A DNA stretch of 64,000 bases from Vitrella brassicaformis CCMP3155. Its lineage: Eukaryota > Protista > Chromerida. Shown here one piece after another: positions 17,800 to 63,276 of the stretch. Each line of letters starts with the position of its first letter. Within the stretch, counting starts at the first letter, position 1. Below the pieces are notes generated by a model. It was not told the DNA's origin and searched no databases. It saw only the letters and a program-made list of their open reading frames with translations. The DNA lies in assembly GCA_001179505.1 (NCBI GenBank), contig CDMY01000061.1:1-64000 (forward strand). Direction: 5' to 3'. Made by a program: the position numbers and the translations under genes.

Positions 17800-20700
17800 T
17801 TTCCTCACACACGTGTGAGCCCTTCGCAATCAGTCAATCAGTCAATGAAGCGACCAATCTGCGCAGTGAGTGATACTAGCGTCCCGCACCAACAGACAAA
17901 ACCCTTCACACACACACATGCGCCCCGCCCCTCGTCTCTCCCTCTCTGTCGTGCGCTCCGTTGATTCTCGATAAGCGAGTGGGTCGAAAAAGATTTAAAG
18001 AGTTGTGGGAATCGTCTCTCTGTCAGTGCTTGAGCCACTCTTAGCGTCCGATCGGGTCGAAACGGATCGGCACATCCCTGAGTGACTCACTCACTCACGC
18101 ACTGACGTCTCTCTCTCTCTCTCTCTCACTGTTTCCGTCTCTCTGTCCGTCCGTATAGAGAAATAGAAAGATGGACACGGGTGGGGCTGATGGAAGGGAT
18201 GGGTGCATTCGCATATAGACACACACACACAGTCAGGCAGATAGATAGATAGATAGATGAGATGCACACAAGTACTTAGGCAGCCAGCCCAGCCAGGCTA
18301 ACAGACTGACACAGATGAAGGAAGGAAGGATGCACGCACGCACACGCACGGATGGATCGACCAACCCTCAAACACACACACACACATACACATACACATC
18401 CACACACACAGCCAGTCAGCCACCCACATGCATAGGAATCACCCAACTAACCGTCAGGCAGCAAGAGAGACAGACGGACAGGGGGCTGGGCTGCAGACAA
18501 CGTATGTCGTTAATTATGTCAAGGCCTCCCACTCAAGAGAATGTGTCGTGGGGGGGCTTGATTGAGAACATACAACACACACAGATAGACAGACTAGATG
18601 AAATGAGGTGAGGTGAGGTGAGATGGTCAGACACTCGCATGATGTATGTGTGTGTATGCCCGTACCCGTACGCACATATGCACGGTCACAGCACACCTGC
18701 CTCCCTGCCTCCCTGCCCGCCTGCCTGTCAGCATTCATTCCATCGACCTTTCTGCAATCAGTCCGCACTGTCTGTCTGTTCCCTTCCTTAAGTGTCTGGC
18801 CACCAAACAGACATCAGAACCACACGCCATACACGTGCTTAATACCTCTCTCTCGCCCCCGGCCCACACGCACACACACGCACACGCACCTATCAAGTAC
18901 GTACGTACGTATTATATAGATGGGGTATACAAATACGAAATGAAATGAATAGGTCCTGTCCTTCACCCGGGCAGGCAGACGGGCAGGCAGCCAGGCGGCT
19001 TACAAAGGCAGTTGATTCGCAGCCAGGCTGCTTACAGGAGCCATATAGAGAAAGAGAGGAAGGGATAAATAGCTACCTACCTACATATATATGTAGTGTA
19101 GAGAGAGCGAGAGACACACATGTATGTAAGTACACAATCTATAGAGCGCACACACAGACATGCACATGCACATGCAGTGCAATACAGACACGTACAACAC
19201 ACACACACACGAAAGGGTTAGGACGAGGTCTTATGGGCTATTACTAGCTAGCTATACCGGGACCCCGCCACTACACGCACCTGACTGGAAATAGGCAGAC
19301 AGATAGGCGGGGCGGGATGGATGGATGGACGGACGGAGGGGTGGGCGACTCGCCTTGTCGGCCAGCCATCGACCCGACACACAGACAGACAGACAGACAG
19401 TACACAACACGCGTCACGAGTCAGTCGTCAGGGATTGCGTGGATAATGGGCTGAATGCAGGTACGCATGTTTGAGTGTGGCGTGGATGGATGGATGGATG
19501 GCATGTATCGGGAAAATGGATAAAGAGTTCCGTAAACACACACCTACCATACACACACACCCCTGCCTCTCTCCGTGAGTGAGTGAACCAAAGACCGTAT
19601 GGACCAACCAACCAACCAAAGAACCAACCAACCAAAACCCGACACTTCATCCATCGCCTTTCTTCTTTCTTCATAACAACCTCGAATCGATATCCATCCC
19701 CCGCCAGGCCAGGCCACACCTGCCCTGCCCTGTCCTGCTCGCCTCCATTCTGATGCGAGCGAGGCATGCATGCTTCGCGCGAGAAGGATCGATACATTGG
19801 GTATATATATACTGAAGGTACATAGGATCAATTGCATCTCGCGCTCTCTCTCTCTCTGGCTGCCGGCCGGCCGGCTGGCCGTCTGACTGACTGACACACC
19901 ACAGCCGAGTGAGCTGAGAGCTGAGCGAGTCGAGATGACGGTAAAGCGTTGCTTGGAGTTATTGACCATCCCTCCCCTCCCTCCCCTCCCATCCAGTCCA
20001 CCAAGAGGGAAGCGACTGACTAAAGTAGACAGAGAGACGAGCCAGCCCTCGCCCGTCACCCCCCGTACGCACAGCTCACACACACGACACGATGGACGCA
20101 GACGAATGAACGAAGGGATTAATGTATGTAATGGCGGGGATCGTTGAATGAGTCAAGAATGAAATGTATCCATGAAAAGACCGACCCGACCCGACCAGCT
20201 ATCTACTGCATTGCGTAGGTAGGTGCAAGCCAAGCAAGTAGGCAAGTGTGTCGTGTCCTGTCCATCCGCACACCCACCCCACGCCATGGACCCAAACATG
20301 CACATATATCGGACATGAAGCCAATATGCCCCTCCCACCCCACCCCACCCCACCCCAAGCACGTCCCGCATCTCTCTTTCTCCCCGTCTGTGGACAGACG
20401 GGTCAGTCGGTGCATTCAGTCAACGCATTGCATGCCACGCAAGGAAAGGACAGTCGCCAGCAGCCCGTCCCGCTATGAATGAATGGATGGCCAAGCAAGC
20501 GAAGACCGACGCGAGAAGCCCGGTCCGCCCGTCATCCCCCACCAGACAAGTAGACAAGTGACAGACACCACAGGATGCCCGCCTCCCTCAGCTAAATAGA
20601 GACCGATAGATACACCGGCCCTTCCCTCCCTCCCTCCCTCTGCGTGCTGTCTGCCAATTTCATAAATTCCTCGCCGACCGACCGACCGCATCTCTGTCGC

Positions 20701-23139
20701 ATGTGTGTGTGTGTCTAGGTACTTCCTTCCTGTGTAGGTAGGTACTGAGTGGTGTGTAATGAAATGTAATTAATGCATGTAGGGTCATGACCTGTGGCAT
20801 GGTGGGTGCATAATTCTCCAGCTGCGTATGGTATGGATGGAAGGCCTAAAAACCGAGCAGAGCAAGCGACTGATGAGAGTACACACACACACCTAGCTGC
20901 CTGCCTGTCTTTCTCCCTCCCTCCCTCCCTCCCTGCCTGTGTGCTTAGCCGCCCGGCCCGCATCATGTGCCCGTGTGCTATCTGCCCGCCCTGTATGTGT
21001 CGGCTACATCGCTGTGTGTGTGTGTGCACGTAGGTAGAATTGCCCTCACCTTTGTGAGGGATACATCTGTGTGCGTATGTATGTGGATGTCCGCGTTGGC
21101 CCAGAGAGAGCGAGAGGGTGGGCGGAGAGGCAGTGGGTCGCAGAAACCATACATGCTACAGACAGCAAGTGAACGAACGGCAGCAGGCCCAGCCAGCACA
21201 ATGAAAAAGCACAGAGACCGACCGACCGACCTGACCGACCGAGTGGGCAAAAGCTGTCTGTGTGTGGCGGTGCTGTGCGATGGATGGCAAGTGAACAGAG
21301 GGATGGATGGCTGTGTGGCAGACACGGCACGTAAGCCTTATTTATTTACCAGCAGAAAGTAAGTGATTCATAGGCAGGCCGAACAGCAAAAAACAGAAAA
21401 CAACACAGACCGCAAGCGCATTGCATTCTTGGGTGGCCATGCGTGTGTGTGTGTGTGTGTACGGGTGAGTGGGTATGCACTGCATGTCGTGCGTGGCATA
21501 TGCATGGCATGTCGTGCGAGCATGAATCAATAATCAACATGTGTCTTCTGTGCGCGGTGCGTGGCGGAAAGAAAAACCGTGTACACACAAAACACACAAA
21601 CCAAGATACATATGTCTCTGTCCCTCTCTGCAGTTAACTAACGGACCCCCCCCCTCCCATTCCCCCACCCACCCACGCCATGACGCACGCACTTGAGTGC
21701 ACAGAGGGGTGACCGACAAGGTGAGGTCAGGTGAGCGATGGATGGATGGATGGATGGTGGAAAGAAGGCAAAAGACCTCGACCGACCGACCGACCGATCA
21801 AAAGAAAGCATGGAAACCACACATGCACACACACGCGCAGCGCAGCGCAGCGCAGCGCAGCGCACAGGACCGCACCGACTGACTGAAACAAACAGAAAAC
21901 AAACATGACCGACACACATGAATGAATGACATCAGCAGGAAGGCAGTGAGTCAAATGCGTTCAAAAAGACTATAAGACGAAAACCGTGCAATAAACAAAC
22001 AACAAGCAGACAGACAGACCTCAGGCAGACAAACAGGCAGGCAGGCAGGCAGGCGGTGCTCGCCTCGTCTGCCCGACTGGCTGGCTGGCTGATAGGTCAA
22101 TCAACAGGTTCACAAAAACTGCGGAGCGGCGCTCGTGACCAAAGACAGACAGACAGACAGACAGCCATCCATCGATCCAATCAGTCTACCAACCAACCAA
22201 AAGATAAGACAACAAGACGACGAGACGACAGCATCCATCATCAGACAGGCACATGATGCAGCCAGCAAGACAACACACAAACACGACACACCGTTGATGT
22301 GTGTGTACTTGAAAGAAAGCAAGACAGCGAGGGACGGACACCGAGCGACTGACCGACCGACCGACCGACCCAGCAGGTGACTGAGGCAAGAGCCAGTAAG
22401 TGTCACTGAGTGAGAGACACTACAAAAACAAAGCAAGGCGACGAGACAGACGCAGCAAGCCAGAAGGCGGGCGGGTCGGTTGGGCGGGCTGGGGGTGCGG
22501 TGTTTTGAGCCAGATGGATGGATGGATGGATGGGCACCAGCCAAGTAAGTCGATGGATCGATGAGATGAGATGAGATGGGATTGTGTCAGGTATGAGCAA
22601 GTGACAGACAGAGGCGACTCTCCCTTGTGGAGGGGTGTGTGTGTGTGCGTGTGCGTGTGTGTGGCCACCACAAGGATATCTCTTCACTCACTCAGTGTCA
22701 GGTCAGTCAGGAAGCCGCTATACATCCCGCCCTGCCGCCCTGCCTGCCCAGCAAGCGCCTCACTCAGGCCACCACAGCAAAACCACCGACCGGCATTCAT
22801 CCCTGCATTCATCGAGCAATCGATGAGACAGTAGATAGATAGACATTCCCCGTCCGTTCGTCCGTCCATTTTGCTTCTTCTCATTCATCGTCTCGTTAAC
22901 TCCTCTCTCTACGTGTCTTTGAGCACCACACACATGAATGCATGCAGCACACACCACTCAGCACATCCAGCTGGGTACAGCCTTGATGGGGGGCCCCTCA
23001 CCTCTCCTGAGCAGCCCCCCAACAAGGGCAAACAACAGCGACATGGTCCAGCAGCAGCACACCCACACCCACACGTCCTTGAGCAAGTCTTCCTGCTGTC
23101 TGTCTGTCAAATCACGAGCGAGCAAAGAGCGACCCGACG

Positions 23140-23175
<36 letters not shown>

Positions 23176-24050
23176 AGGGGACAGAAAGCAATCGGTCGAT
23201 TGACCGACAGAAGACGTATGCACGCACGAACGGAGCACCCAGCACGCACCCATCCATCCATCGGTCCACGAACGCATCGCATCAAGTGTGGTGTGGTGTG
23301 GTGAGTGGTGGCACGCATGAGCAAGTAGGAATTAGAGTGTACGAAACGCACGGTTACGTAAGTAATGCGTGTGATGTGATGTGGGTTGGTTGGTTGGAGT
23401 GCCTGATTCACAGTGGGGTGACTGCTGGCGGGCGGGCGGGCGGGCTGACTTACTGCATGCACCCACCACATCCATCCATCCATCAAAGCAGAGTGGAGCG
23501 GGGCGAGGGGAAACTGGAGGCAGGGGCAACTAGGGAGTGAGGGCAAGGGGGAGCAAGCAACCAAGACGGGACGGGCAGACAGGAGGGCACACACACCCGC
23601 ACAGCACACACACGGAAAGCAGCGAAAGCCGACCGACAGACAGAGGACCAAAGGCACACACGACGCTCCTCAACTCATTCAGAGGCACTCTCTCACTCTC
23701 ACACGTGTGAGGCCGCCCACTGGCTAGATTTAGTAAGTAGCAAGTCAGTTAGAATCACCAGAACCACCCACCGCACAGCATTCAATCACCCCTGACAGGC
23801 AGACAGACAGACACCCACACGATGGCAAAATGATAGCAACATTGCAACCACACACAACACAACACACCAAAGCAAAGAGAACGCAGTGAGTGAGGCAGGC
23901 AGGCAGGCAGTGACCTTCCTTCTGCAGGAACCAAACCGTCCCTGCAGGTAATGCGCTTGACGGCACCTTCAGGCCACCCGACCAGCCGACACATCACGAC
24001 AAACAACCTGCACACACGCACATATTGACATACACACACAATGACGGCAG
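17800..24050. repeat. long mosaic of simple-sequence repeats with no recognisable coding exon
   Basis: Dense (CA)n, (GACA)n, (GGAT)n, (GACC)n, (GATA)n, (GCAGC)n, (GGCA)n and (CT)n tracts; the ORFs listed here are translations of microsatellites. Confidence 0.75.
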
Positions 24051-52366: not shown

Positions 52367-52482
52367 GGGTTCTTCTTTGTTGAGATCTGCTGGCAACACC
52401 TGTTCGAGAGCTTATCACGGGGGAGACCAGGCGAACAATTTCATTGCGAGCTTTTTTCGCTAAGCTCGCAGACGTCCGCGGA
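52367..52482. promoter_or_regulatory. putative bidirectional promoter (UTP4 <- -> PCD)
   Basis: 116 bp between divergent ATGs at 52366 and 52483. Confidence 0.55.
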
Positions 52483-52931
52483 ATGAAGCTTGATGCGTCC
52501 AAGCTGCCTGCCTTGCTGCAGCAGCACATTCCAAAATGGAAGGTGCTGAGCGAGCCGACGCGGCTGCAGCGATCGTACGCATTCAAAGACTTCAACGAGG
52601 TGAGCCGACCGCAGCAGCATGCACAGCGAGCGGGACTTCCATTTGCAAGAGATCTGAGACTCATCCGGCATTCATGACATGAATCACATGTGTGTGCGTC
52701 GGTTCTCTGCTCGTGTGATGTCTGACTGCCGGTGCGGTGCAGGCGTGGGGCTTCATGTCGCGTGTGGCGCTTCACGCTGAGAAGGCCGACCACCACCCCA
52801 ACTGGTACAACGTATACAACCGCGTGGATGTGGAACTGTCGACGCACGATGCGGGCGGCGTCACACAGAAGGACATCGACCTCGCCACCAAGATGGAGAA
52901 AATCGCACATGACATGGGGCAGGACAAGTGA
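52483..52931 (+). CDS. PCBD: pterin-4-alpha-carbinolamine dehydratase (PCD/DCoH), 2 exons
   Basis: [12 protein letters not shown]|[48 protein letters not shown], including the catalytic HHP and STH motifs; GT-AG intron 52600-52742. Confidence 0.95.
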
Positions 52932-53421
52932 ATGACGCAGAATGAATGAATGAATGAATGGGATGGGCGGGCTGGGGGGTCGACCAGAAAGGGTGAGGGT
53001 GGGTGTAATGCATGGTGATGCGGCTGCGCTCTGGGTGGGTGGGAGGGTGTACTAAGGCTTCTTTTCTCGTAAGGCAGGCCTAGGCAGGTAGTTAGCATTT
53101 TCTTAGTTGGCGTTCAGGCCAGATGCTAAGCGCCTTTTGTGACGACTTTTGTGTGTGCGTGTAAGATGATCGACGGCTCTCTGCAGACAGACACATGCAA
53201 TGGATGCGGGCATGAGTCAACGACAGAGTCCGTGGAAAAAATGAGGGCCGCATACATACATATCAATTCAATTAGTCCAGTGAAAAAAGACAGATAATCA
53301 CATTCATCCATTCGATCACCCCCCCACATCATATCATATACCCTCACACAACACAACACAACACAACACAACACACCGAACTCAGCTCTCAACCCCATAT
53401 ATAATGCGGTCAGCCAGCCAG

Positions 53422-56400
53422 CTAGGGGTGCAGTGCCACCTGCATCTCGTGTGTCTGCACCTCACACACGTCCAGTGGCCGGAAGGACGCACCACCCAGG
53501 GCATGCCGCCCAACCCACTCCTTGATCTCCTGTGGGCTGCCCGCAGCCACCAGACCCATGGCTGATGAGGCCTCGATGGTCACTTGACCCTGGCTGCCTC
53601 GTCGCAAGCTCCTTTGCGGTGACGGCGAGTCGGACACCTGCACTCACTCATCCATGGGGGGGAGAGGGAGACAAGAGAGAGTCTGTGAGTGAATGTGTGA
53701 ATGGCCGCGTCTCTTTGGCGGTGTCGTGCGTTGGTGCATGCCGATGGTTGAAAGTGGCTTGGGGTTCCCTCGGTCAGGTTGTCTGGCCTGGACAAGAGCA
53801 CCCACATCTTGGCGCACACGTCATCGAACAGTTCACGGAGCGACGCGGGATCGCTGCAGCAGACCACGGCGAGACAAACAGGTATACGCAGTCGGTTTCA
53901 CACACATCTGCACACACGTTGACTCATTGTCTGACCTCTGCTGCGGCTTTGGCAGCGATGCGAGCCGCTGCTTCCAAGCGCCGACAATCGTCTAAGCAGA
54001 TAAGATACACACAGCCCGTTGCGCCACACCACGCTTCACATGCATGCCTTTCCTTGTTGTCAAGCACCTGTCTAACGTCAGGGTCGGCGAGCACACTCGG
54101 CAGCATCCTCAGCCCCGAAGGACCACCAACGGGCGCCACAAACCCACCCATGGGCAACAGAGGGCCCTGCGGCACAGCCGCCTGCTGCTGCTGCTGTCTG
54201 GCCTTCCTGGTTGCCGTGGGACTGACGGACGATGTGAGCCCCAGTGATGCCCGCGTGCTGTTTAGGTTGGGGGGCGGCGCGGCACCTGAGTGCTCTGCAA
54301 CGCTGTGGCACCCTGCGTGACGTGACCGCGACACAGAGAGATGGATGCATGATCGATTACATGTGGCTTGGCTGTCGTGTACAGAACATACATGCGAGAT
54401 GGAATTGGTGCATAAGTGGCAGGACGACCCGTGGAATGACTCCGAAGGGCGGGAGTGTGATCGCCGCCAGGCTGGCCATCGCCTCTGCCCCAAGCCGGGC
54501 CTCGGGCACCGCATCCACCGTCAGCCTACACGATACGACCATCAACCAACACGACACCGTGGTGACCAGCAGCAACTGCGTCCCTCTTCCCTTGTCTGTC
54601 CTAACGTTGATTTCAGCAGGGGTGCGTGGGGGCTTCCCGTGGTTGCAGATGCCGTGACCTGCCCGCCCACGGCCCCCACAGGCAGCAAGACGCTCAAGCC
54701 CCTCCGCTGCGACCCCTGCAGACGGGGAATGCTCTGCGCGTCCAGCCCCACTGTGTGCTCGACTGTGCCGCCCTGCAGAGAAATCTCGTGCTTTTGTTGT
54801 TGCAGCTGCTGGGGGCTGGAGGGCGCCTTGCCTGCCCCTGCACGAGACAGCGGAAGGCTTGACAGGGGCAGCTTCGCCCAACCGCAGGCAATCTGGTGAT
54901 AAATGAAGCTGGTGCATCATTGTGTGTGAATGCTAGTGTGGGCGAATGAGACTCGCCCACCTGAACGGGCAGCGGGGAGGAGCCGCCGTTGTGGTCTGCT
55001 GGCCTGTCAGGTGCTGGAGCTGCCGGGATGGCGGGCTTCAGGAGGTGCTTGACGACCCGCAGCGATGCTTCGAAGAGCAGCGAGCAGCAGTCGATGAGCC
55101 TCCTGTCCTCGCCGGTGGATGGCAGGTGGAGGATGGCCATGCTGTCGTCAGTGCGGCCTGATGCGCCACTGCTGCGGAATGACCAAGTGTCGGGCGACTG
55201 CGGAGACACGCTCGCTCCGAACACGCAACTGCCACTCTGTCACAAACACACATCGCATACACATAACTAACATACATGCCCCCACGCATTGCATTGCATT
55301 GACAGGCGTGCCGTGCCGTGCCCCCCCACCTGGTATTGCCTGGTGTGCTCGTTGTACACGGTGATCCGCAGCTGTCTCCCGCAGACCTGCCACGTCCCAT
55401 CGATGGGCTCCGCCACGGGCCGCCCTTCCACGTCTCGAAAGGGCGACGGTACGCCCCTCATGCTCTCCAGCACTAGCCCCACAAACACCCCCACATCCCG
55501 CCTCTTGGACTTCTCCTTGGGCTTGCCACGACACAAGCCGCGTCTCTCCGCTTTAGGGACAATGCGGTTGGGAAAGAGGTGTGTGTGGATGAGGGGGTGG
55601 GCCGTGAGGAGACCGCTGCTGTCCGAGGCGGCCGTGGGTGGCAGCGCTGAGGGGCGGGGGACGGCGGGAAGGCGGCGGAAATGAGGCGGCAGGCCGACCA
55701 GCGCCCCGACGTATGCGTCCAAACGGAGCCGGCGAGAGTGGCTGAATGAAGGGACGATCAGGATCCATCTATACATTCGTTCTGTCGTGTCTGTCTCTGT
55801 GGCGTGGCGCCAGAGCCCACCTAAATTTGAGGAGCGCGGCAGCGGTAGCCACATCTTGGACCGCCTCGGTGTCTCTGGCTTCCTCCTCTTGAATGAGGGA
55901 CATGAACTCGTCTATGTCAACCGTCGCATTTCTGTCACGGTCGGCGGCGTTGAATATCGCCGATGTCTCCGCATCAGTGAGGGACACGTTGCACCGCTTC
56001 AGAGCGGTCGACAGCTCCTCGCGCGTCAGCCGACCGTTCTTGTCCAGATCCGCTGCGTCAAACGCCTCCCGAGCCTGTTACACACACACACACACACACA
56101 CACGAACGAGCATTCGATTGGCGCGCTTCTCTTTTCTCTTTAGCTGTGCTGTACCTGTTGGTAGAAGTCTTGGTCCTGTTTAAGTGCCTGCTGCACGTAT
56201 GGGGTCATCAGTGCCCGAATCTCAGCGGCGTCGAGCCGTCCGTTGCCGTCCCGATCGGCCGCTGCGATGAGTCTCTCCACTTCCCATTGAGGCACCTCAC
56301 AACCTGGACACGGCCCAAGCAAGCGTCTCGTGTGTGGATGAGTTAAGTCCGCCTTTCTGTGTCTCCCCCACCGAGGGATAGCAAGGCGAGGCGCAGCTCA

Positions 56401-59400
56401 CTGCTGTCGATGGCGCCGTCATTGTTGGTATCAAAATGTCGAAAGACCACCCTGTGTATCTCTGCGTCCATCTGCTGCTCCAGCCGCAACTGGGCCGCCA
56501 CACGCCGCAGGGTAAAGGCAAACTTCTCAGCTGGTACTTGATCACGACAGCCACCAGTTGTTCGACACAGGAAGGCCACGATCTCCGAGCAATCACTGAG
56601 ATGGATCTCCGCCTTGTGGTGAGACGACAGTCGATGCAGCCCATCGGCTCTGAGCATTCTCTGCGGGGACGATGGCTGGCTTATGGCGTGCTGCTCGCAG
56701 GCCTCGAGCGTTCTTGCAAAAGACCAGCCATCAAAGTGCTGTGCCAGAGGCCGCAGAGCCCGCAGCGCATCCTCATAAGCGTCACGGAGGTACTGCTCGA
56801 ACACAGCCAGGTCGATGTACCGATCGTATTCCGACCGGCCGTCTGCCGCACGACCGCCGATCTGCAGGAACGCCACTGCATCCTGCACCTTTCGCGTCGC
56901 CTCCTGGTCCACTCCCACCGAAATGCTGAAGTAAGACCTCAGAACTTCCTGAAGCTGGTCGGCTGCCATCATGCGGCTCGAGAGCGTCGCAGCTGCAGCT
57001 GCGTGTCTCTCCGGCGAGACTTCAGCCTGAACCTGCATTTGGAAGGGTGCGATGGCACCTTCCACCGACGGCACCCTCGTCTTGATTTGTCGACACAGCC
57101 AGATGACGGCGGCCTGCCCCCGGACCTGCCAGTCTGGCTGTTCGCCGAAGTGTGGTGATGGGAGTGTATGAGCGGCGTCGGCAGGTTGGCGGGGCGGCGG
57201 GACAACTTGGAAGGGCGGGGAAGGGGTCCGGGGAGGTGCAGGGGGGAGGGATGAGGGAGCAGGCACGAGGGCGTCAAGCAGATGTGTGGAGATCCATCCA
57301 GAGCAGCTGGGATCCAGGTACCTGCAGCACGTGATGAGGGGGGGGGCGTGTTGAATGCTACCTTCTTGTCATTGCTCACTGCTGCATGGCACGGATCTCG
57401 AAGGCTTCGAAGTCGAATCCAAGCTCCATCCACAAAGACGCAATCTCACGCCTACAGAAGTGACGACAACGCCTCAGGTCAGATAAGCAGCACACACGCA
57501 GATGGGGCCGCTGCGCTTACGTCATGAGTGCATCTCCTGAGGGTGTCGCCATGCCTCTCCGTGCAGCCGTTTGGCCCATCGCCTGGCTCAACGTCATCTG
57601 GTCCTGCTCCAACAAATCTCGCTGCGCACTGAGGAGCAGTTCTCGCACGCCCCGCACTGTTTGGCTGGACATGACGCCCAGCAACCCAAACCCATCGCGG
57701 ATGTCTGGTTGACGGAGGTGGGTGCCGAGGGCCTTCAGGTGCTTTGATGCAGCCGAGGCAATGGCGTCAGGGCCTTCACGGTCCGGCAGGAAGGCCGCCA
57801 CGTCCGGTGACCGTCCGATGATTGCCTGGACGTGAGATTGGATCGCGTCGACAGGCATGGGGGGCTGAAACGAGGCCGTGAGAAGGCCATGCAGCTGTTT
57901 CAGGGAATAAGGGAGAGACAGGTTGGTCAGGAGTGCGTGAAGAGCAGCATAGGTAAGGGGCAGATCCAGTGCGCCTTGGAAGCCTTGCCATGTGACCGAT
58001 GGCTGACCGAGGTCGCGGGCGTAGTCGAAGAAGCTCTGCGTCTCTTCCTTGCTGAAGGTGGAAGACAGTGGGCTCGCCCGCACGGCCTCCTCCAGAGTGC
58101 TTATATTCTTGAACAGCACTGCTGACGGCGAGCTCACGAGAGGCACCTGCAGCTGAAGTCGTCGCATTTTCATGGACGCCTCGAGTATCTGGAAAGGGAG
58201 CTCACAGCTCAGCGCGCGAACCGCAGCGTCGATACCGGCAGTGTCAGGGCGGCCGTGTCTCTGTGTCGCCGAGGATTGGTCGAGCAGGGCCATGGTGAAC
58301 AGGCCGGAAGCCACTTGCATGAGCGACTTCGTGTCGCTTGCAGAATCGCTCATCATGTCCCTTGTTGGATCGCTCAACAATGACTCGGTCATGCTCAACC
58401 AGCTGGTTCGAGTCAGCTCCCGAGATGGTCCCAAATGCACTCGAAGCCATTCACGCACCACTTCAGCACTGCTCTCCTCGCCGACCCGAGGGCTCATGCG
58501 GGAAGAGCTGAGCTGGGCGAGCTCAATCTCCCCTCTCAGCTTCGACACTGCAGTGTTGTTTGCAGCCAACAGACAGTCGCGAAGCGCCAAGGGAGACGCG
58601 GCACCAACCTTCGTCAGCAGATGGGCGACGATAGGGCCCTCGAGGATTGCCGGGGTCCGCGTGCGTAAGAAGTCCATGAGGTCGGCTTCATTCCACTGTG
58701 CTGTCGCTTTCTCCTTCTCTGCCTCTTCACATTCTTGACTGAACCGCCGAATAGCCGCCTCCTCTCTCTCCCCGTGGCGCCTTGCGTGAAGGATGAGTCT
58801 CATGCGCACAACCCACAGCACCGAAGAGCCAGCCAGAATACCCCCGAGAAGGATATCGGTGCCGACGTCTGGTAATGGGGCAGGAGGAACGGGTGTCGGG
58901 GGTATGGGTGGCTGGATCGCGGGAGGCGACGGCTCAGAAATAGGCGGTGGCTGCGGCTGTGGATGTGGCGGGACTTCCCTTTCTGGGGCGAGGTCGTGCA
59001 GTGCTTTTCGGAGCTCTCTGAGTGCGATAGTGTTGCTGCCGTCGCGATCGAGATACCCGAAGAGCTTCTGGCCACTGATCGACGACACACGTATCTCCCT
59101 GCACAGCCTCAGAAACTCCTCTCTGTCCAGCGTCCGGCTGCCGTTCTCATCAAGATGATCAAATGCACTCTTGACGCTGCCATAGCACTCGATGAGGCGC
59201 CCTCTGAACTCCTGCATGGCTTCTCTCCGTTCTGAGTCCTCGTCAGACTCAATGGCACTCAGTGATTGGACGTCGTCGGGGCTGCCGCTCATCGATGTGG
59301 ATTGCTGCGGCGGCTGTGGTGCCGCCATCTCCTGCGGTGGCTGCACCCTTATCTGAGGGGCCGAGGGAGGGGGAGGGGCTAGTGCTTCCTGCCGCGGCTT

Positions 59401-62400
59401 GACAGCATCGGTGTCCAGTGGGGCTTGCTGTAAGAGGTCCATGACCTGCTCGAGAGTAATCACACCGTCCTGCTCTTCGTCAACGAGGATGAAGATAAGT
59501 CGAGCCACGACACTGCGAAGGTCTGCCTCGCTGGCCCCTTCCACGTCAACCAGGGCTTCCATGTCCATGAACAGCGACGACGCGTCCACCCCAACGGTTA
59601 ACATCGCAAACGCCTGTGCCAGGAGGTTGGAGCTCAGGAGGGTGGTGGGGGTGACCTCTGCCCTCATGACCGTTGACAGCGCGTCCTCCAGGGCCGACAT
59701 CACTCGGCTTCCGTAGTGCTCGTCGAGACACAGCGCGAAACGAGTGACGAGCTTGCCGTAGTCGACTCTCATCGCGATGGCCCAGTCAGGGTGTGACTGC
59801 GCAAAAGGGAGCATCACACGCTGATTGAAGATGCGCAGGACGGCAGCAAAAGGCGTCGGAGCCGACAGAAGCCTTTCTCGTGACGACGCCCTCTCCGGCC
59901 GTTTCTTCCTAAGGGCAGTCTGCAGCTCGTCGGCTGTGATGCAGTTGTCCCTCTTGCTGTCGATGAGAGAGAACAGGGTCATGGCGTCACCAATGCTGAT
60001 ACCCATTAGCATCAAGCGATCGACCACGTCGCCCAAGCCAAGCTTTGTCCCAGTTGTCTTCGGGGGAGCGCCGCCGTATGTGGATGTTCGCACATGGGCA
60101 CGCTCAGCGGCCTCGAATGCATCCCTTAGTGAGGCGTAGTGCTGCAGCACAAGGTCACGCAGCTTGTTGACCAGCGCTGCTCTCTCCTCCACTGAGGGCC
60201 TCCGTTCGAGGTCGAACGACGTCTCCGAGGAGAACGAGGACGCCCCTGCATCAACACAACACAGTAGACCAGAACAGGATTGTTGAATGATTGCTTACAC
60301 TGGGCGCAGGCGATGAGATGTCGAGCTTGGTCTCTCGTCAGCTCTCCCTTGCCTTCAACATCCAGTGCTCTGAACACGGTACTGAAACAGCTGTCCGTCG
60401 TCCGTGCGAACACGTTGCAGCGCCTCAGCCACCGATCAATTTCAGCCGAACTGACGGTAGCTGGCGATGTGTCGAGCGAATCAAAGGCCTTTTGGAGCGT
60501 GCCGAATCGGTCAAGCAGCCGACGCCGCAGACAGACAATCACAGCCGACTCTACAGACAGAAGCAACAAATCAACCAACCAACATCGATGGCCTTCGCCC
60601 TATTTGGTCCATGTTGTTGTCGTGTTGTACCTTCACTCTTTGGATCAGGAAAGACAGCCTGCACTCTGCTGTGACTGTCCCCCTTCAGCTGCAAGTCTAG
60701 CAGGTCGTGTAACTCACCCCAGTCACCGATCGCCGCCCACCCAGCGTCAGCCGGGCGGTACACGTACGTATAGCGAGACGCTCTGCGGCCGCTATCGTCA
60801 CCTCTTCGGCCGTTGGTTGGCACAGAGGCTGCCTTTGCTGATGCTATTTGGGTCTGGCGAGGCGCTGATCCGCCCGCGAGCGACTCGAACAGGTCATCTG
60901 CAGGGCTGGTCCCATGCGTGTCTATATGAAGCATTTCAACCCGCACGCCCCACAGCTGCAGAGCGCGGGAGATGGTGGCTGGCGACACGGGAGAGCGGGG
61001 CTGTACGTCCGTTCCAGCATACAACATTCGAAATGCCTCATCAAGGGAGAAGAAACGCACCAGAATGGCCTCTCTCAAAGCTTCCAACGCAGTGCCTGCG
61101 ACGACGCCAGCAAGAAAGGCGCACCCGTAGTGTCTCTAGTCTATGATTGTGTGTCGCCAGACCTTGCGGCAGGATTGCTGACGTCCTGCGCATCGCTTGT
61201 ACAAGCTGGTCGACTGTGACAAGTCCAGAGCGGGAGTCATCCAGGGCCGCCATCAGGTCGGCCACGTCCGCGTCTCCTCGCTTGAAGAGGGCAATGGAGA
61301 GTCGCTGGAGACCCTCAATGGGCATGGGATCATCAACACCGTAGCCAAAGTCTGGTGGGTGGATGTCGACAAGGGAATGTGTGCAATGCATAGACACGGC
61401 GATCAGCCTGCATTCCTGACCTTGAGCGGTGCGTTCAAGTACCGAGGAGGGCTCGCTCGTGGTCAACGTGCTTAGCGAATACTTGAAGCGACGAAGGGAA
61501 GTGGCAGCGCTACCTGATCCGAGAGACGACGTCACACGACGTCAAGAGAATGTCGGCCTGAATCCGTTACCTTCTGAAATCCTATCGCCAGCCGCCTCCC
61601 TGTGGGCCCACAGGGCCCACCGCACCTCGTTCACACTGACACTGCCCTCACTGCCCCGCTGCGCAAGAGCACTCCGCAGCGGCTCAAAGCATCGCGGGAC
61701 AGCCTGTCGTCTCCTCATCTCACTCAGCAGGCTTATGACCGCCCAGCACAATGCATCACGGTCCCATTCTGCCTCTGGCACCTGATCGAGACTTGGGAAG
61801 TAGAGGTGTGGGAGCAAGCCCGACCACTGAGTGCCGTCAATCGGCGCAGACTGCACGCATGTGACAAGATGCCGGCGAGTGGTTGATGAATGCACCATGT
61901 ACCTTTCTGCATCACTTACTGGTTGGAGTCTCGTTTTTGTCTGCAGGTGCTGCATGGCAGCCTCAATGGTGGGATGCCGCTGCAGGATGCGACGACGCAA
62001 CCCCCGCAGCCAAGACACTCCTGGCGTTGTCACACAGACAGACAGACAGACGATTGTGTCTCACGCGCAAGGGCGAGAGTGTGCGTGGGCCCACCTACCT
62101 TGTGAGTGTGTCATTATCCGTGTCTCGCGCACCGGCGGGGCTTCGGCAGCTGCCTGTGCTGCGGGAGGCTCGGCCTTCACGGCCCTGCTAATGCCCCGTC
62201 GTAACTCATCGAAAGTCACAACACCGTTCTGCTTGACATCAAGCTCTCTGAAGAGGCTCGATGCCGCTGCATCGTCGATGTCTCTGTCGAGGTCCAATCG
62301 CTGGAGAGATCGGCAGAACTCTAGCCGCGTCAGCCTGTGGGCAGACGAGCGCCATGACATACGCATGGCATCATCTCTGTCTGGTTCATTCCCTTTCCTC

Positions 62401-63276
62401 TTTGACTCACCGGTCATCAAAGTTCTCATCCATGCGAAGAAACGCCTTGTCGAGTGTGCCGAACCGACGCACAAGAACATCACGCAGCTCGACCAGAGAC
62501 AGAGGAGGGGCTGCAGATGGCGGCTGAGGAGCAGCGACAGGCGAGACGGCAGCTGAGACTGCCGGCGTCTCTCTCGGACGAATGACCCCCTGCTGCTGTG
62601 CCATGGCTTGAGCCCTCTCAAACTGAGACGCCATGTCCTGCTCGCCCCTCCCCCTCGCCGGCACATCATATTGTGGCTCCCCATCTCTGTCCCGGCCCTC
62701 GTCGTGACGATCCACCTCCCCAGCACGCCGACGTGCCCCCACGTCCTCATAGCTCTGGGTGGCCTCCTTACGGAAGGTCATGGGCGCCTCAGGCATTGGG
62801 TGGTAGGGTTCAGATGGCTGTGTTGCGAGGGGCGGCGGGTGAAGCGGCATCTGATAAAGTGGCTGTTGTTGCTGTGCTGGATATGGCTGTTCGTCTGCTG
62901 CTGTGAGTGAGTATGTGGCCTGCGGGGAGTAGGGGGGCGGGGCGGGACCCATGGCTGGGGCAGCGTACGCGGTTGGGGAAGGGAGAGGGGCAGATGGAGG
63001 AACGGGCGGGGGCTGCGAGGGAGGGGGATAAACCGAAGGCTGTATGAGAACAATGTAGAATGACGTTGATGTTGCATCGTGCTCACCACCGCTCACCTGC
63101 ACATCGTGACGGCCTGGGTGGGCGGAGACCGGCCGTCCGTGTGTAGGGGGTGCGGGTCGACCATAAATCTCCCACATGTCCCCCTCGAGGTCCCCCTCGT
63201 CGGCTGAGTCGTCCCACACCTCCGCGATGTCCTCGGGGATGTCGTCCTCAAAATCGTTGTCATACTCACCGGACAT
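53422..63276 (-). CDS. giant multi-EF-hand protein with C-terminal nephrocystin-1 (NPHP1)-like domain
   Basis: Start MSGEYDNDFEDD (63276), a Pro/Gln-rich region, then many EF-hand-like loops (LDVKQNGVVTFDEL, LDDSRSGLVTVDQL, LDVEGKGELTRDQA, IDSKRDNCITADEL, VDEEQDGVITLEQV, LDENGSRTLDREEF, LDRDGSNTIALREL, FDTNNDGAIDSSEL, ADRDGNGRLDAAEI, ADRDRNATVDIDEF) in exons with GT-AG borders. Exons 55560->53422 carry the NPHP1-like motif series (see findings). Confidence 0.75.

What the first reader, a model, noticed from the sequence alone, without database searches (positions are those of the whole stretch)
53422..55560. Nephrocystin-1 (NPHP1)-like domain at the C-terminus of a giant EF-hand protein
Seen, in order across seven exons: VFVGLVLESMRGVPSP...QVCGRQLRITVYNE; SCVFGASVSPQSPDTWSF; LLFEASLRVV; IACGWAKLPL...KHEISLQGGTVE...PLLKSTL; LPPFGVIPRVVLPLMHQFHLA; LRMLPSVLADPDVRQVL; SLRELFDDVCAKMWVLL; SFRPLDVCEV. 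From memory these parallel the human NPHP1 C-terminal domain (..IPLPG...VLSRHVRLCLFD; NIHTVRATW.PK.PKTWTF; ILFELGISYI; ELSCGWVFLKL...TYELFLNGGTP...PQLLVKL; LPETLIG..SIHLLIFYRQIL; LATFPMLLEQPDVMDAL; FLKSTFLLVYHD.VLPLL; HEPFDLSE). Known: NPHP1 is a ciliary transition-zone gate protein with a coiled-coil + SH3 N-terminus in animals, and the NPHP module is generally regarded as absent from apicomplexans. Inference: a previously undescribed Ca2+-sensing NPHP1 variant in which a very long EF-hand array replaces the SH3 region, i.e. a calcium-regulated flagellar gate in a close free-living relative of apicomplexans.
Basis: partly seen in the sequence, partly recalled or inferred. Interest (0 to 1): 0.82.

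Follow-up and report, generated by a model that had tools for sequence, protein, structure and literature searches.

The report
EF-hand type nephrocystin-1-like gene in Vitrella
A 2789-residue calcium-binding (EF-hand) protein of the alga Vitrella brassicaformis ends in a domain that probably matches the C2-plus-helical core of the ciliary gate protein nephrocystin-1. This EF-hand architecture was already described for protists in 2012, so it is a likely new member of a known kind.

Summary
All eight quoted peptides lie on the minus strand at 53422-55560. A spliced 8.5-kb transcript contig shows they belong to one open reading frame with the upstream EF-hand exons. That frame equals the database protein P0001 (2789 aa, Vitrella brassicaformis, named only "EF-hand domain-containing protein").

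A 56-nt micro-exon was missed, and one intron is GC-AG.

The nephrocystin-1 (NPHP1) reading is supported only indirectly:
- Language-model neighbours of the C-terminal 505 aa are nephrocystin-named clusters and C2-type clusters (scores 0.89-0.91).
- The layout (N-terminal EF-hands, one C2-like region, then a helix-rich tail) matches the "EF-hand + NPHP1-C2 + alpha-helical" variant of Zhang & Aravind 2012.
- The gene is single-copy, and the genome also encodes MKS-module transition-zone proteins.

No HMMER-level match was obtained. No real NPHP1 sequence could be obtained, and the single-sequence fold was useless. Membership is therefore probable (about 0.65), not shown.

"Previously undescribed" is wrong, because EF-hand NPHP1 variants are published. 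Interest is modest: an unannotated chromerid NPHP1 candidate, at odds with surveys that call NPHP1 opisthokont- or metazoan-specific.

The parts
53422..63276 (-). Coding sequence of the whole gene (P0001, 2789 aa), from the ATG at 63276 to the stop at 53422-53424
   Evidence: P0001 starts MSGEYDNDFEDD, which is the ORF 62407..63276. The stop position follows. The transcript contig length of 8503 nt equals 59 nt of 5'UTR, 8370 nt of CDS and about 74 nt of 3'UTR.
56372..57321 (-). Exon ending in the first EF-hand of the last four-EF-hand module (loop DTNNDGAIDSSE, P0001 2057)
   Evidence: Joints, phases, Pfam EF-hand_6 at 6e-07, loop pattern.
56155..56303 (-). EF-hand exon (loop DRDGNGRLDAAE, P0001 2093)
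   Evidence: The downstream intron 56075-56154 carries a (TG)n run; its joint was dropped by the reads tool and is inferred from the contig arithmetic and from P0001.
55821..56074 (-). EF-hand pair exon (loops at P0001 2135 and 2171). Its last two bases plus the first base of the next exon form a Ser codon.
   Evidence: Pfam EF-hand_7 at 1.5e-12; junction 55821|55741.
55330..55741 (-). Pro-rich and basic linker, then the start of the C2-like region (VGVFVGLVLES...RITVYNEHTRQYQ)
   Evidence: P0001 2211-2348.
54961..55236 (-). C2-like region, second exon (SGSCVFGASVSPQSPDTWSF...LLFEASLRVV)
54606..54892 (-). C2-like region, third exon (IACGWAKLPL...KHEISLQGGTVE...PLLKS)
   Evidence: 100% identity to P0001 2441-2535.
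54392..54525 (-). Exon LTVDAVPEARLG...LPPFGVIPRVVLPLMHQFHLA (start of the helix-rich tail)
54068..54312 (-). Exon with a low-complexity stretch, then GLRMLPSVLADPDVRQ
53936..53991 (-).
   Evidence: Joints 53991|54068 and 53853|53936; present in P0001.
53742..53853 (-). Exon DPASLRELFDDVCAKMWVLLSRPDNLTEGTPSHFQPS
53638..53741 (-). GC-AG intron (non-canonical donor)
   Evidence: The joint 53636|53741 may shift by 1 nt, which gives GC..AG. The frame is kept, and P0001 has ...SHFQPS|VSDSPSP.
53389..53637 (-). Last exon: VSDSPSP...SFRPLDVCEVQTHEMQVALHP, stop at 53422-53424, then 3'UTR

Best explanation
The stretch is the 3' third of a single minus-strand gene of Vitrella brassicaformis. The gene encodes a 2789-aa cytosolic protein.

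Its first ~2200 residues carry scattered EF-hand pairs and end in a calmodulin-like module of four canonical EF-hands (loops at 2057, 2093, 2135 and 2171). A ~90-residue Pro-rich and basic linker follows. The last ~500 residues are most likely the conserved core of nephrocystin-1: an NPHP1-type C2 beta-sandwich (about 2290-2540, with low-complexity inserts) followed by a helix-rich tail (about 2540-2789).

This would make it the protist 'EF-hand + NPHP1-C2 + alpha-helical' form of NPHP1 that Zhang & Aravind described in 2012.

Inferred mechanism, not shown here: the C2/helical core places the protein at the flagellar transition zone of the zoospore, at the membrane end of the Y-links alongside the MKS module. 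The EF-hands would make its conformation or its partners respond to Ca2+.

Shown: gene structure, transcription, single ORF, EF-hands, single copy, and presence of MKS-module genes in the genome. Inferred: NPHP1 homology, transition-zone location, Ca2+ regulation.
For: One ORF and one transcript:
- A spliced 8503-nt contig of run X4 covers the stretch.
- The introns are consensus and the frame is unbroken.
- The product matches P0001 at the junctions compared, and the UTR arithmetic fits.

EF-hands: Pfam EF-hand_7, EF-hand_1 and EF-hand_6 score from 1e-12 to 1e-36, far above their cut-offs. Four canonical loops lie just upstream of the domain.

C-terminal domain:
- ESM Atlas feature search of P0001:2285-2789 gave 'hypothetical protein' 0.91 first, then 'putative Nephrocystin 4' 0.91, 'SH3 domain-containing protein (Fragment)' of chordates 0.90, Nephrocystin-4 with PF28126 NPHP4_C2_2nd 0.89, and Aida_C2 0.84.
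- The DSSP pattern of the low-confidence model is strand-rich first and helix-rich after.

Architecture: N-terminal EF-hands, one C2-like region and a helical tail equal the NPHP1 variant in PMC3495828. That paper gives 'SH3+NPHP1-C2+alpha-helical domain' for human NPHP1 and says other clades 'show EF-hand domains'.

Genomic context: no paralogue in the genome. Elsewhere in the genome lie B9-C2 at three loci, Meckelin and TMEM231.

From memory only (a lead, not a test): the human NPHP1 C-terminus aligns colinearly with the Vitrella peptides.
Against: There is no statistically significant sequence match to any NPHP1.
- Pfam was blank.
- The PDB sequence search was blank.
- The exhaustive phmmer search with the 95-aa exon found only the protein itself and one repetitive false hit.
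- Three word-based searches covering candidate lengths of 278-4880 aa found only the protein itself.
- The metagenome scan was blank.

The Atlas 'recognition' value was low (1495 against the usual 2300), so high scores there are weak evidence. The neighbours also do not separate NPHP1-C2 from NPHP4-C2. The helical half alone gave only chance-level ELMO_CED12 hits at 0.79-0.81. The AF2 model had mean pLDDT 36.7, so the fold is not established.
Confidence: 0.65

Rival explanations
1. The C-terminal domain is a ciliary C2-type domain of another family (NPHP4-type, or a further divergent C2 such as the Aida/NT-C2 kind) fused to EF-hands. On this reading it is not an NPHP1 orthologue.
For: Atlas neighbours include 'putative Nephrocystin 4' at 0.91 and NPHP4_C2_2nd clusters at 0.89, as high as the presumed NPHP1 fragment cluster, plus Aida_C2 and several DUF C2-like families. 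Zhang & Aravind also report NPHP4 versions with EF-hands.
Against: In the published NPHP4 variant the EF-hands are C-terminal and there are two C2 domains. Here the EF-hands are N-terminal, there is only one C2-like region, and a helix-rich tail follows, as in NPHP1. The colinear motif resemblance to the NPHP1 helical tail also argues against this, but that rests on memory only.
Confidence: 0.15
2. The C-terminal ~500 aa is a lineage-specific, partly disordered region with no real relation to nephrocystins. The motif resemblance and the language-model neighbours are chance.
For: All HMMER-level searches were blank. The Atlas recognition value was low, and the tool states that shuffled proteins reach 0.9 in 4-10% of cases. 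The region has long low-complexity inserts. The model has pLDDT 36.7.
Against: The architecture also coincides with a published NPHP1 variant.
Confidence: 0.15
3. The EF-hand part and the C-terminal part are two genes, and the single contig or gene model is a chimera.
For: The reads tool warns that a contig across two genes does not prove one transcript.
Against: The frame stays open across every junction, including 55821|55741, with no stop or plausible start between the parts. The contig length equals the CDS plus short UTRs. An independent database gene model is the same at the exon junctions compared.
Confidence: 0.03

Closest known systems
Protist 'EF-hand + NPHP1-C2 + alpha-helical' form of nephrocystin-1 (Zhang & Aravind 2012, PMC3495828)
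   Same: N-terminal EF-hands instead of SH3, a single C2-like region, a helical tail, and a predicted Ca2+-responsive transition-zone role.
   Different: Membership is not shown by a significant alignment here. The Vitrella protein is very long (2789 aa), with about 2200 residues of EF-hand-bearing sequence. The lengths and species of the published examples could not be read, because the figure and supplement are not held.
Animal nephrocystin-1 (NPHP1: coiled coil + SH3 + nephrocystin homology domain)
   Same: The presumed C2 + helical core, and a colinear motif resemblance (from memory, untested).
   Different: No SH3 domain was found by Pfam anywhere in P0001, and coiled coils were not examined. 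EF-hands are present instead, and the C2-like region has large low-complexity inserts.
Nephrocystin-4 (NPHP4N-C2 + NPHP4C-C2 + Ig/ASH domains, or EF-hands in some protists)
   Same: A ciliary C2-type domain. It has the same top Atlas neighbour score, and EF-hand fusions are known.
   Different: The domain order and number differ: here there is one C2-like region at the C-terminus, after the EF-hands.
Paramecium RPGRIP1L with C-terminal EF-hands (PMC7093003)
   Same: A transition-zone C2 protein that has gained EF-hands in an alveolate.
   Different: It belongs to a different C2 family and has a different domain order. In Paramecium the EF-hands were dispensable for Ca2+-triggered deciliation.

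Membership tests
Nephrocystin-1 (NPHP1-C2 + alpha-helical core) | Significant sequence or profile match of the core to NPHP1 family members | tested here: inconclusive
   The exhaustive phmmer search could be run with one 95-aa exon only, and it found the protein itself and nothing else real. Word searches found no relatives. No NPHP1 model matched in the Pfam copy. Atlas neighbours are nephrocystin-named at 0.89-0.91, but the recognition value is low. No NPHP1 sequence was available by reference, so the direct comparison was left out.
Nephrocystin-1 (NPHP1-C2 + alpha-helical core) | C2-type beta-sandwich followed by an alpha-helical domain | tested here: inconclusive
   Single-sequence AF2 gave mean pLDDT 36.7. 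Its DSSP shows strands at residues 37-101 of the piece and helices from 266 to 480. This is consistent with the feature but not reliable.
Nephrocystin-1 (NPHP1-C2 + alpha-helical core) | Variable N-terminal region carrying SH3 or EF-hand domains (PMC3495828) | tested here: met
   EF-hand Pfam families score far above their cut-offs upstream of the core, and no SH3 is found. Four canonical loops lie at 2057-2182.
Nephrocystin-1 (NPHP1-C2 + alpha-helical core) | Localisation at the transition zone and binding to NPHP4/RPGRIP1L | not testable with these tools
   This needs tagging in zoospores and interaction assays. NPHP4 could not be surveyed because PF28126 is not in the library.
Animal-type NPHP1 architecture | N-terminal coiled coil and SH3 domain | tested here: not met
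   No SH3 family reached E<=1 in any third of P0001. Coiled coils were not examined.
Nephrocystin-4 | Two C2 domains (N-terminal and central), then Ig/ASH or EF-hand domains at the C-terminus | tested here: not met
   The EF-hands are N-terminal, and only one C2-like stretch lies at the C-terminus. The Atlas score of 0.89-0.91 to NPHP4 clusters shows C2 likeness only.
EF-hand superfamily | Helix-loop-helix Ca2+-binding motifs matching Pfam EF-hand models, with canonical 12-residue loops | tested here: met
   EF-hand_7 5.4e-36, EF-hand_1 1e-35 and EF-hand_6 2.9e-35 on P0001:1001-2210, with further hits on 1-1000. Canonical loops were found.

The most novel reading that the evidence does not exclude
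The chromerid lineage kept an NPHP1-type transition-zone protein that apicomplexans later lost. In Vitrella it grew into a giant multi-EF-hand Ca2+ switch, for example one coupling Ca2+ transients to gate opening or to flagellar shedding when zoospores settle. Alternatively, the C-terminal domain is a new, so far unclassified ciliary C2 family.
Probability: 0.2. Interest if true: 0.6.

Novelty: new member of a known kind. Interest (0 to 1): 0.33.

Why it matters
Standard surveys treat NPHP1 as restricted to opisthokonts (PMC4092220) or specific to metazoans (PMC5850483). They list it as absent from Paramecium (PMC7093003) and report that apicomplexans lack almost all transition-zone proteins.

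[quoted passage not shown] It would date the loss of the NPHP module within Myzozoa. It would also give a tractable candidate for Ca2+ control at the flagellar base.

The gain is incremental: this is an annotation and a phyletic data point, not a new kind of system.

Tried and rejected
Searches and folds that gave nothing:
- Pfam on open segments, on exact exons and on P0001:2210-2789 was blank apart from EF-hands. DUF4726 at E=0.12 was dismissed as chance.
- The PDB sequence search was blank at E<=10.
- The exhaustive representative search had to be spent on a single exon, because no full-length reference existed yet. It returned the protein itself (P0001) and a repetitive false positive (P0002).
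- The word searches were blank apart from P0001 itself. The whole C-terminus was searched against candidates of 278-884 aa and of 1534-4880 aa. A region with less low-complexity sequence was searched against candidates of 545-1732 aa. The first two were probably swamped by low-complexity words, so a blank is weak evidence.
- The metagenome scan matched 423 patterns, and none was confirmed.
- The single-sequence AF2 model had pLDDT 36.7, so no fold search was run on it.
- The Atlas search on the helical half gave ELMO_CED12 at 0.79-0.81, which is chance level with no Pfam support.

Side checks:
- PF23564, listed for P0001, is EF-hand_FSTL1 and is irrelevant.
- PF28126 (NPHP4_C2_2nd) is not in the library.
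- CC2D2AN-C2, C2-C2_1 and TCTN were not detected exon-wise in the genome. That is no proof of absence.
- No transmembrane segment was found in P0001.

The tool-returned P0001 served instead.
The direct alignment and its shuffle test were therefore not done.

Full report
**What is in the sequence.**
The window has about 58-60% G+C and a multi-exon eukaryotic gene structure.

**Transcript evidence.**
Of the public runs that hold this stretch, X4 contains one 8503-nt contig. It lies on the minus strand from 53389 to beyond 59200 and skips eleven short segments of 58-104 nt. Their ends read CT..AC on the plus strand, which is GT..AG on the minus strand. X2 is colinear with the genome, so X4 behaves as cDNA although it is not on record as RNA.

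A twelfth intron (56075-56154) contains a (TG)n run. Its joint was dropped by the tool but follows from the contig arithmetic.

Translating each exon in its phase gives one uninterrupted frame. It runs from the 890-aa exon (60192-57521), through the EF-hand exons and across the junction 55821|55741 (…AAALLKF-S-HSRRLRL…), to the stop at 53422-53424.

**The protein.**
An exhaustive phmmer search with the exon 54608-54892 returned P0001, 2789 aa, 100% identical over residues 2441-2535. The sources name it 'unnamed protein product [Vitrella brassicaformis CCMP3155]' and 'EF-hand domain-containing protein'.

The contig length fits 59 nt of 5'UTR, 8370 nt of CDS and about 74 nt of 3'UTR. So the EF-hand part and the C-terminal part are one gene and one ORF. 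I used P0001, which a tool returned.

**Anatomy.**
Pfam finds EF-hand families far above their cut-offs in residues 1-2210, for example EF-hand_7 at 5.4e-36, and nothing else of note. In particular there is no SH3.

Canonical 12-residue loops lie at 283, 1193 and 1227. Four more lie in a row at 2057, 2093, 2135 and 2171. These four form a calmodulin-like module about 90 residues upstream of the C-terminal domain.

The last ~500 residues (2290-2789) have no Pfam match. They contain several low-complexity inserts, have no paralogue in the 72.7-Mb genome and show no transmembrane segment.

**Is the C-terminus NPHP1-like?**
Everything at HMMER level was blank: PDB sequences, the single-exon exhaustive search, three word-based searches covering candidate lengths of 278-4880 aa and a metagenome scan.

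These blanks are weak evidence. The exhaustive search could be given only 95 residues. The word index needs shared exact 5-mers, and it was swamped by low-complexity words in two of the three runs.

A single-sequence AF2 model was unusable, with mean pLDDT 36.7. Its secondary-structure pattern is strand-rich first and helix-rich later.

The one remote-homology signal came from the ESM Atlas feature search of residues 2285-2789. After a 'hypothetical protein' cluster at 0.91, the leading neighbours were:
- 'putative Nephrocystin 4' at 0.91;
- a chordate 'SH3 domain-containing protein (Fragment)' cluster without a common Pfam domain at 0.90, plausibly NPHP1 C-terminal fragments;
- Nephrocystin-4 with NPHP4_C2_2nd at 0.89;
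- Aida_C2 at 0.84.

The tool's own recognition value was low, so this is a lead. The helical half alone gave only chance-level ELMO hits. The signal therefore sits in the C2-like half and cannot by itself separate NPHP1-C2 from NPHP4-C2.

**Literature.**
Zhang & Aravind 2012 (PMC3495828) dissected NPHP1 as SH3 + NPHP1-C2 + alpha-helical domain and traced NPHP1-C2 to basal eukaryotes. [quoted passage not shown] From this they infer Ca2+ responsiveness.

The Vitrella protein has exactly this order: EF-hands, one C2-like region, a helical tail. The NPHP4 variant with EF-hands has them at the C-terminus, after two C2 domains.

This raises the odds of NPHP1 membership and removes most of the claimed novelty. 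Mainstream surveys, by contrast, call NPHP1 restricted to opisthokonts (PMC4092220) or specific to metazoans (PMC5850483), and mark it absent in Paramecium (PMC7093003). No paper in the library links Vitrella or Chromera to nephrocystins.

**Context.**
The Vitrella genome encodes B9-C2 domains at three loci, Meckelin and TMEM231. The MKS module of the transition zone is therefore present, and an NPHP1-type partner is biologically plausible. CC2D2AN-C2, the RPGRIP1 C2 and Tectonic were not picked up exon-wise, which proves nothing. NPHP4 could not be surveyed.

**Mechanism, with odds.**
- One gene, transcribed: about 0.95, shown.
- Ca2+ binding by at least the four canonical C-proximal EF-hands: about 0.8, from motif conservation.
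- C-terminal domain is the NPHP1-C2 + helical core: about 0.65, from indirect evidence.
- Location at the zoospore transition zone, with the EF-hands modulating it in response to Ca2+: about 0.5 and about 0.35, inference from family knowledge.

The Paramecium result that the RPGRIP1L EF-hands are dispensable for deciliation warns against assuming a role.

**What was left out.**
Typed or remembered letters were not to be used. From memory, the human NPHP1 C-terminus does align colinearly with the Vitrella sequence, including the micro-exon segment. That is a lead, not evidence.

**Verdict.**
This is probably a chromerid member of the already described EF-hand form of NPHP1, unannotated in the databases and unusually large. 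It is a new member of a known kind and of modest interest.

Noticed in passing
window 52444-52931 (+): A two-exon pterin-4a-carbinolamine dehydratase (PCD/DCoH) gene converges on the 3' end of the EF-hand/NPHP1-like gene. Pfam Pterin_4a scores 2.8e-23 on the second exon and 7.6e-4 on the first.
   Followed up: partly
window 53638-53741 (-): The last intron of the gene uses a GC-AG boundary, whereas the other ten listed introns are GT-AG. It is supported by the transcript contig and by the database protein.
   Followed up: yes
window 56073-56115: A (TG)n/(CA)n microsatellite lies inside the 80-nt intron between two EF-hand exons. The reads tool skipped it as a repeat and dropped the joint there.
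   Followed up: partly
run X4: A run listed as kind '?' holds a fully spliced 8.5-kb contig, so it behaves as a cDNA/transcriptome run. X6, guessed to be RNA, holds nothing of this gene.
   Followed up: partly
G000 contigs C284:117233-117400, C476:18940-19068, C562:227910-228197, C787:7838-11813, C405:324026-325027: Transition-zone MKS-module genes occur elsewhere in the genome: three B9-C2 loci, Meckelin (TMEM67) and TMEM231.
   Followed up: partly
window 18000-24000: This region has a strong positive AT skew (up to 0.31) and lower G+C (0.53-0.56), with only short AC/ACCA/ACCAGC microsatellites. The cause was not examined.
   Followed up: no
P0002: A 1267-aa protein made of ~60-residue tandem repeats was the only other 'hit' (E=5.4e-4, no aligned stretch reported). 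It is a compositional false positive.
   Followed up: yes
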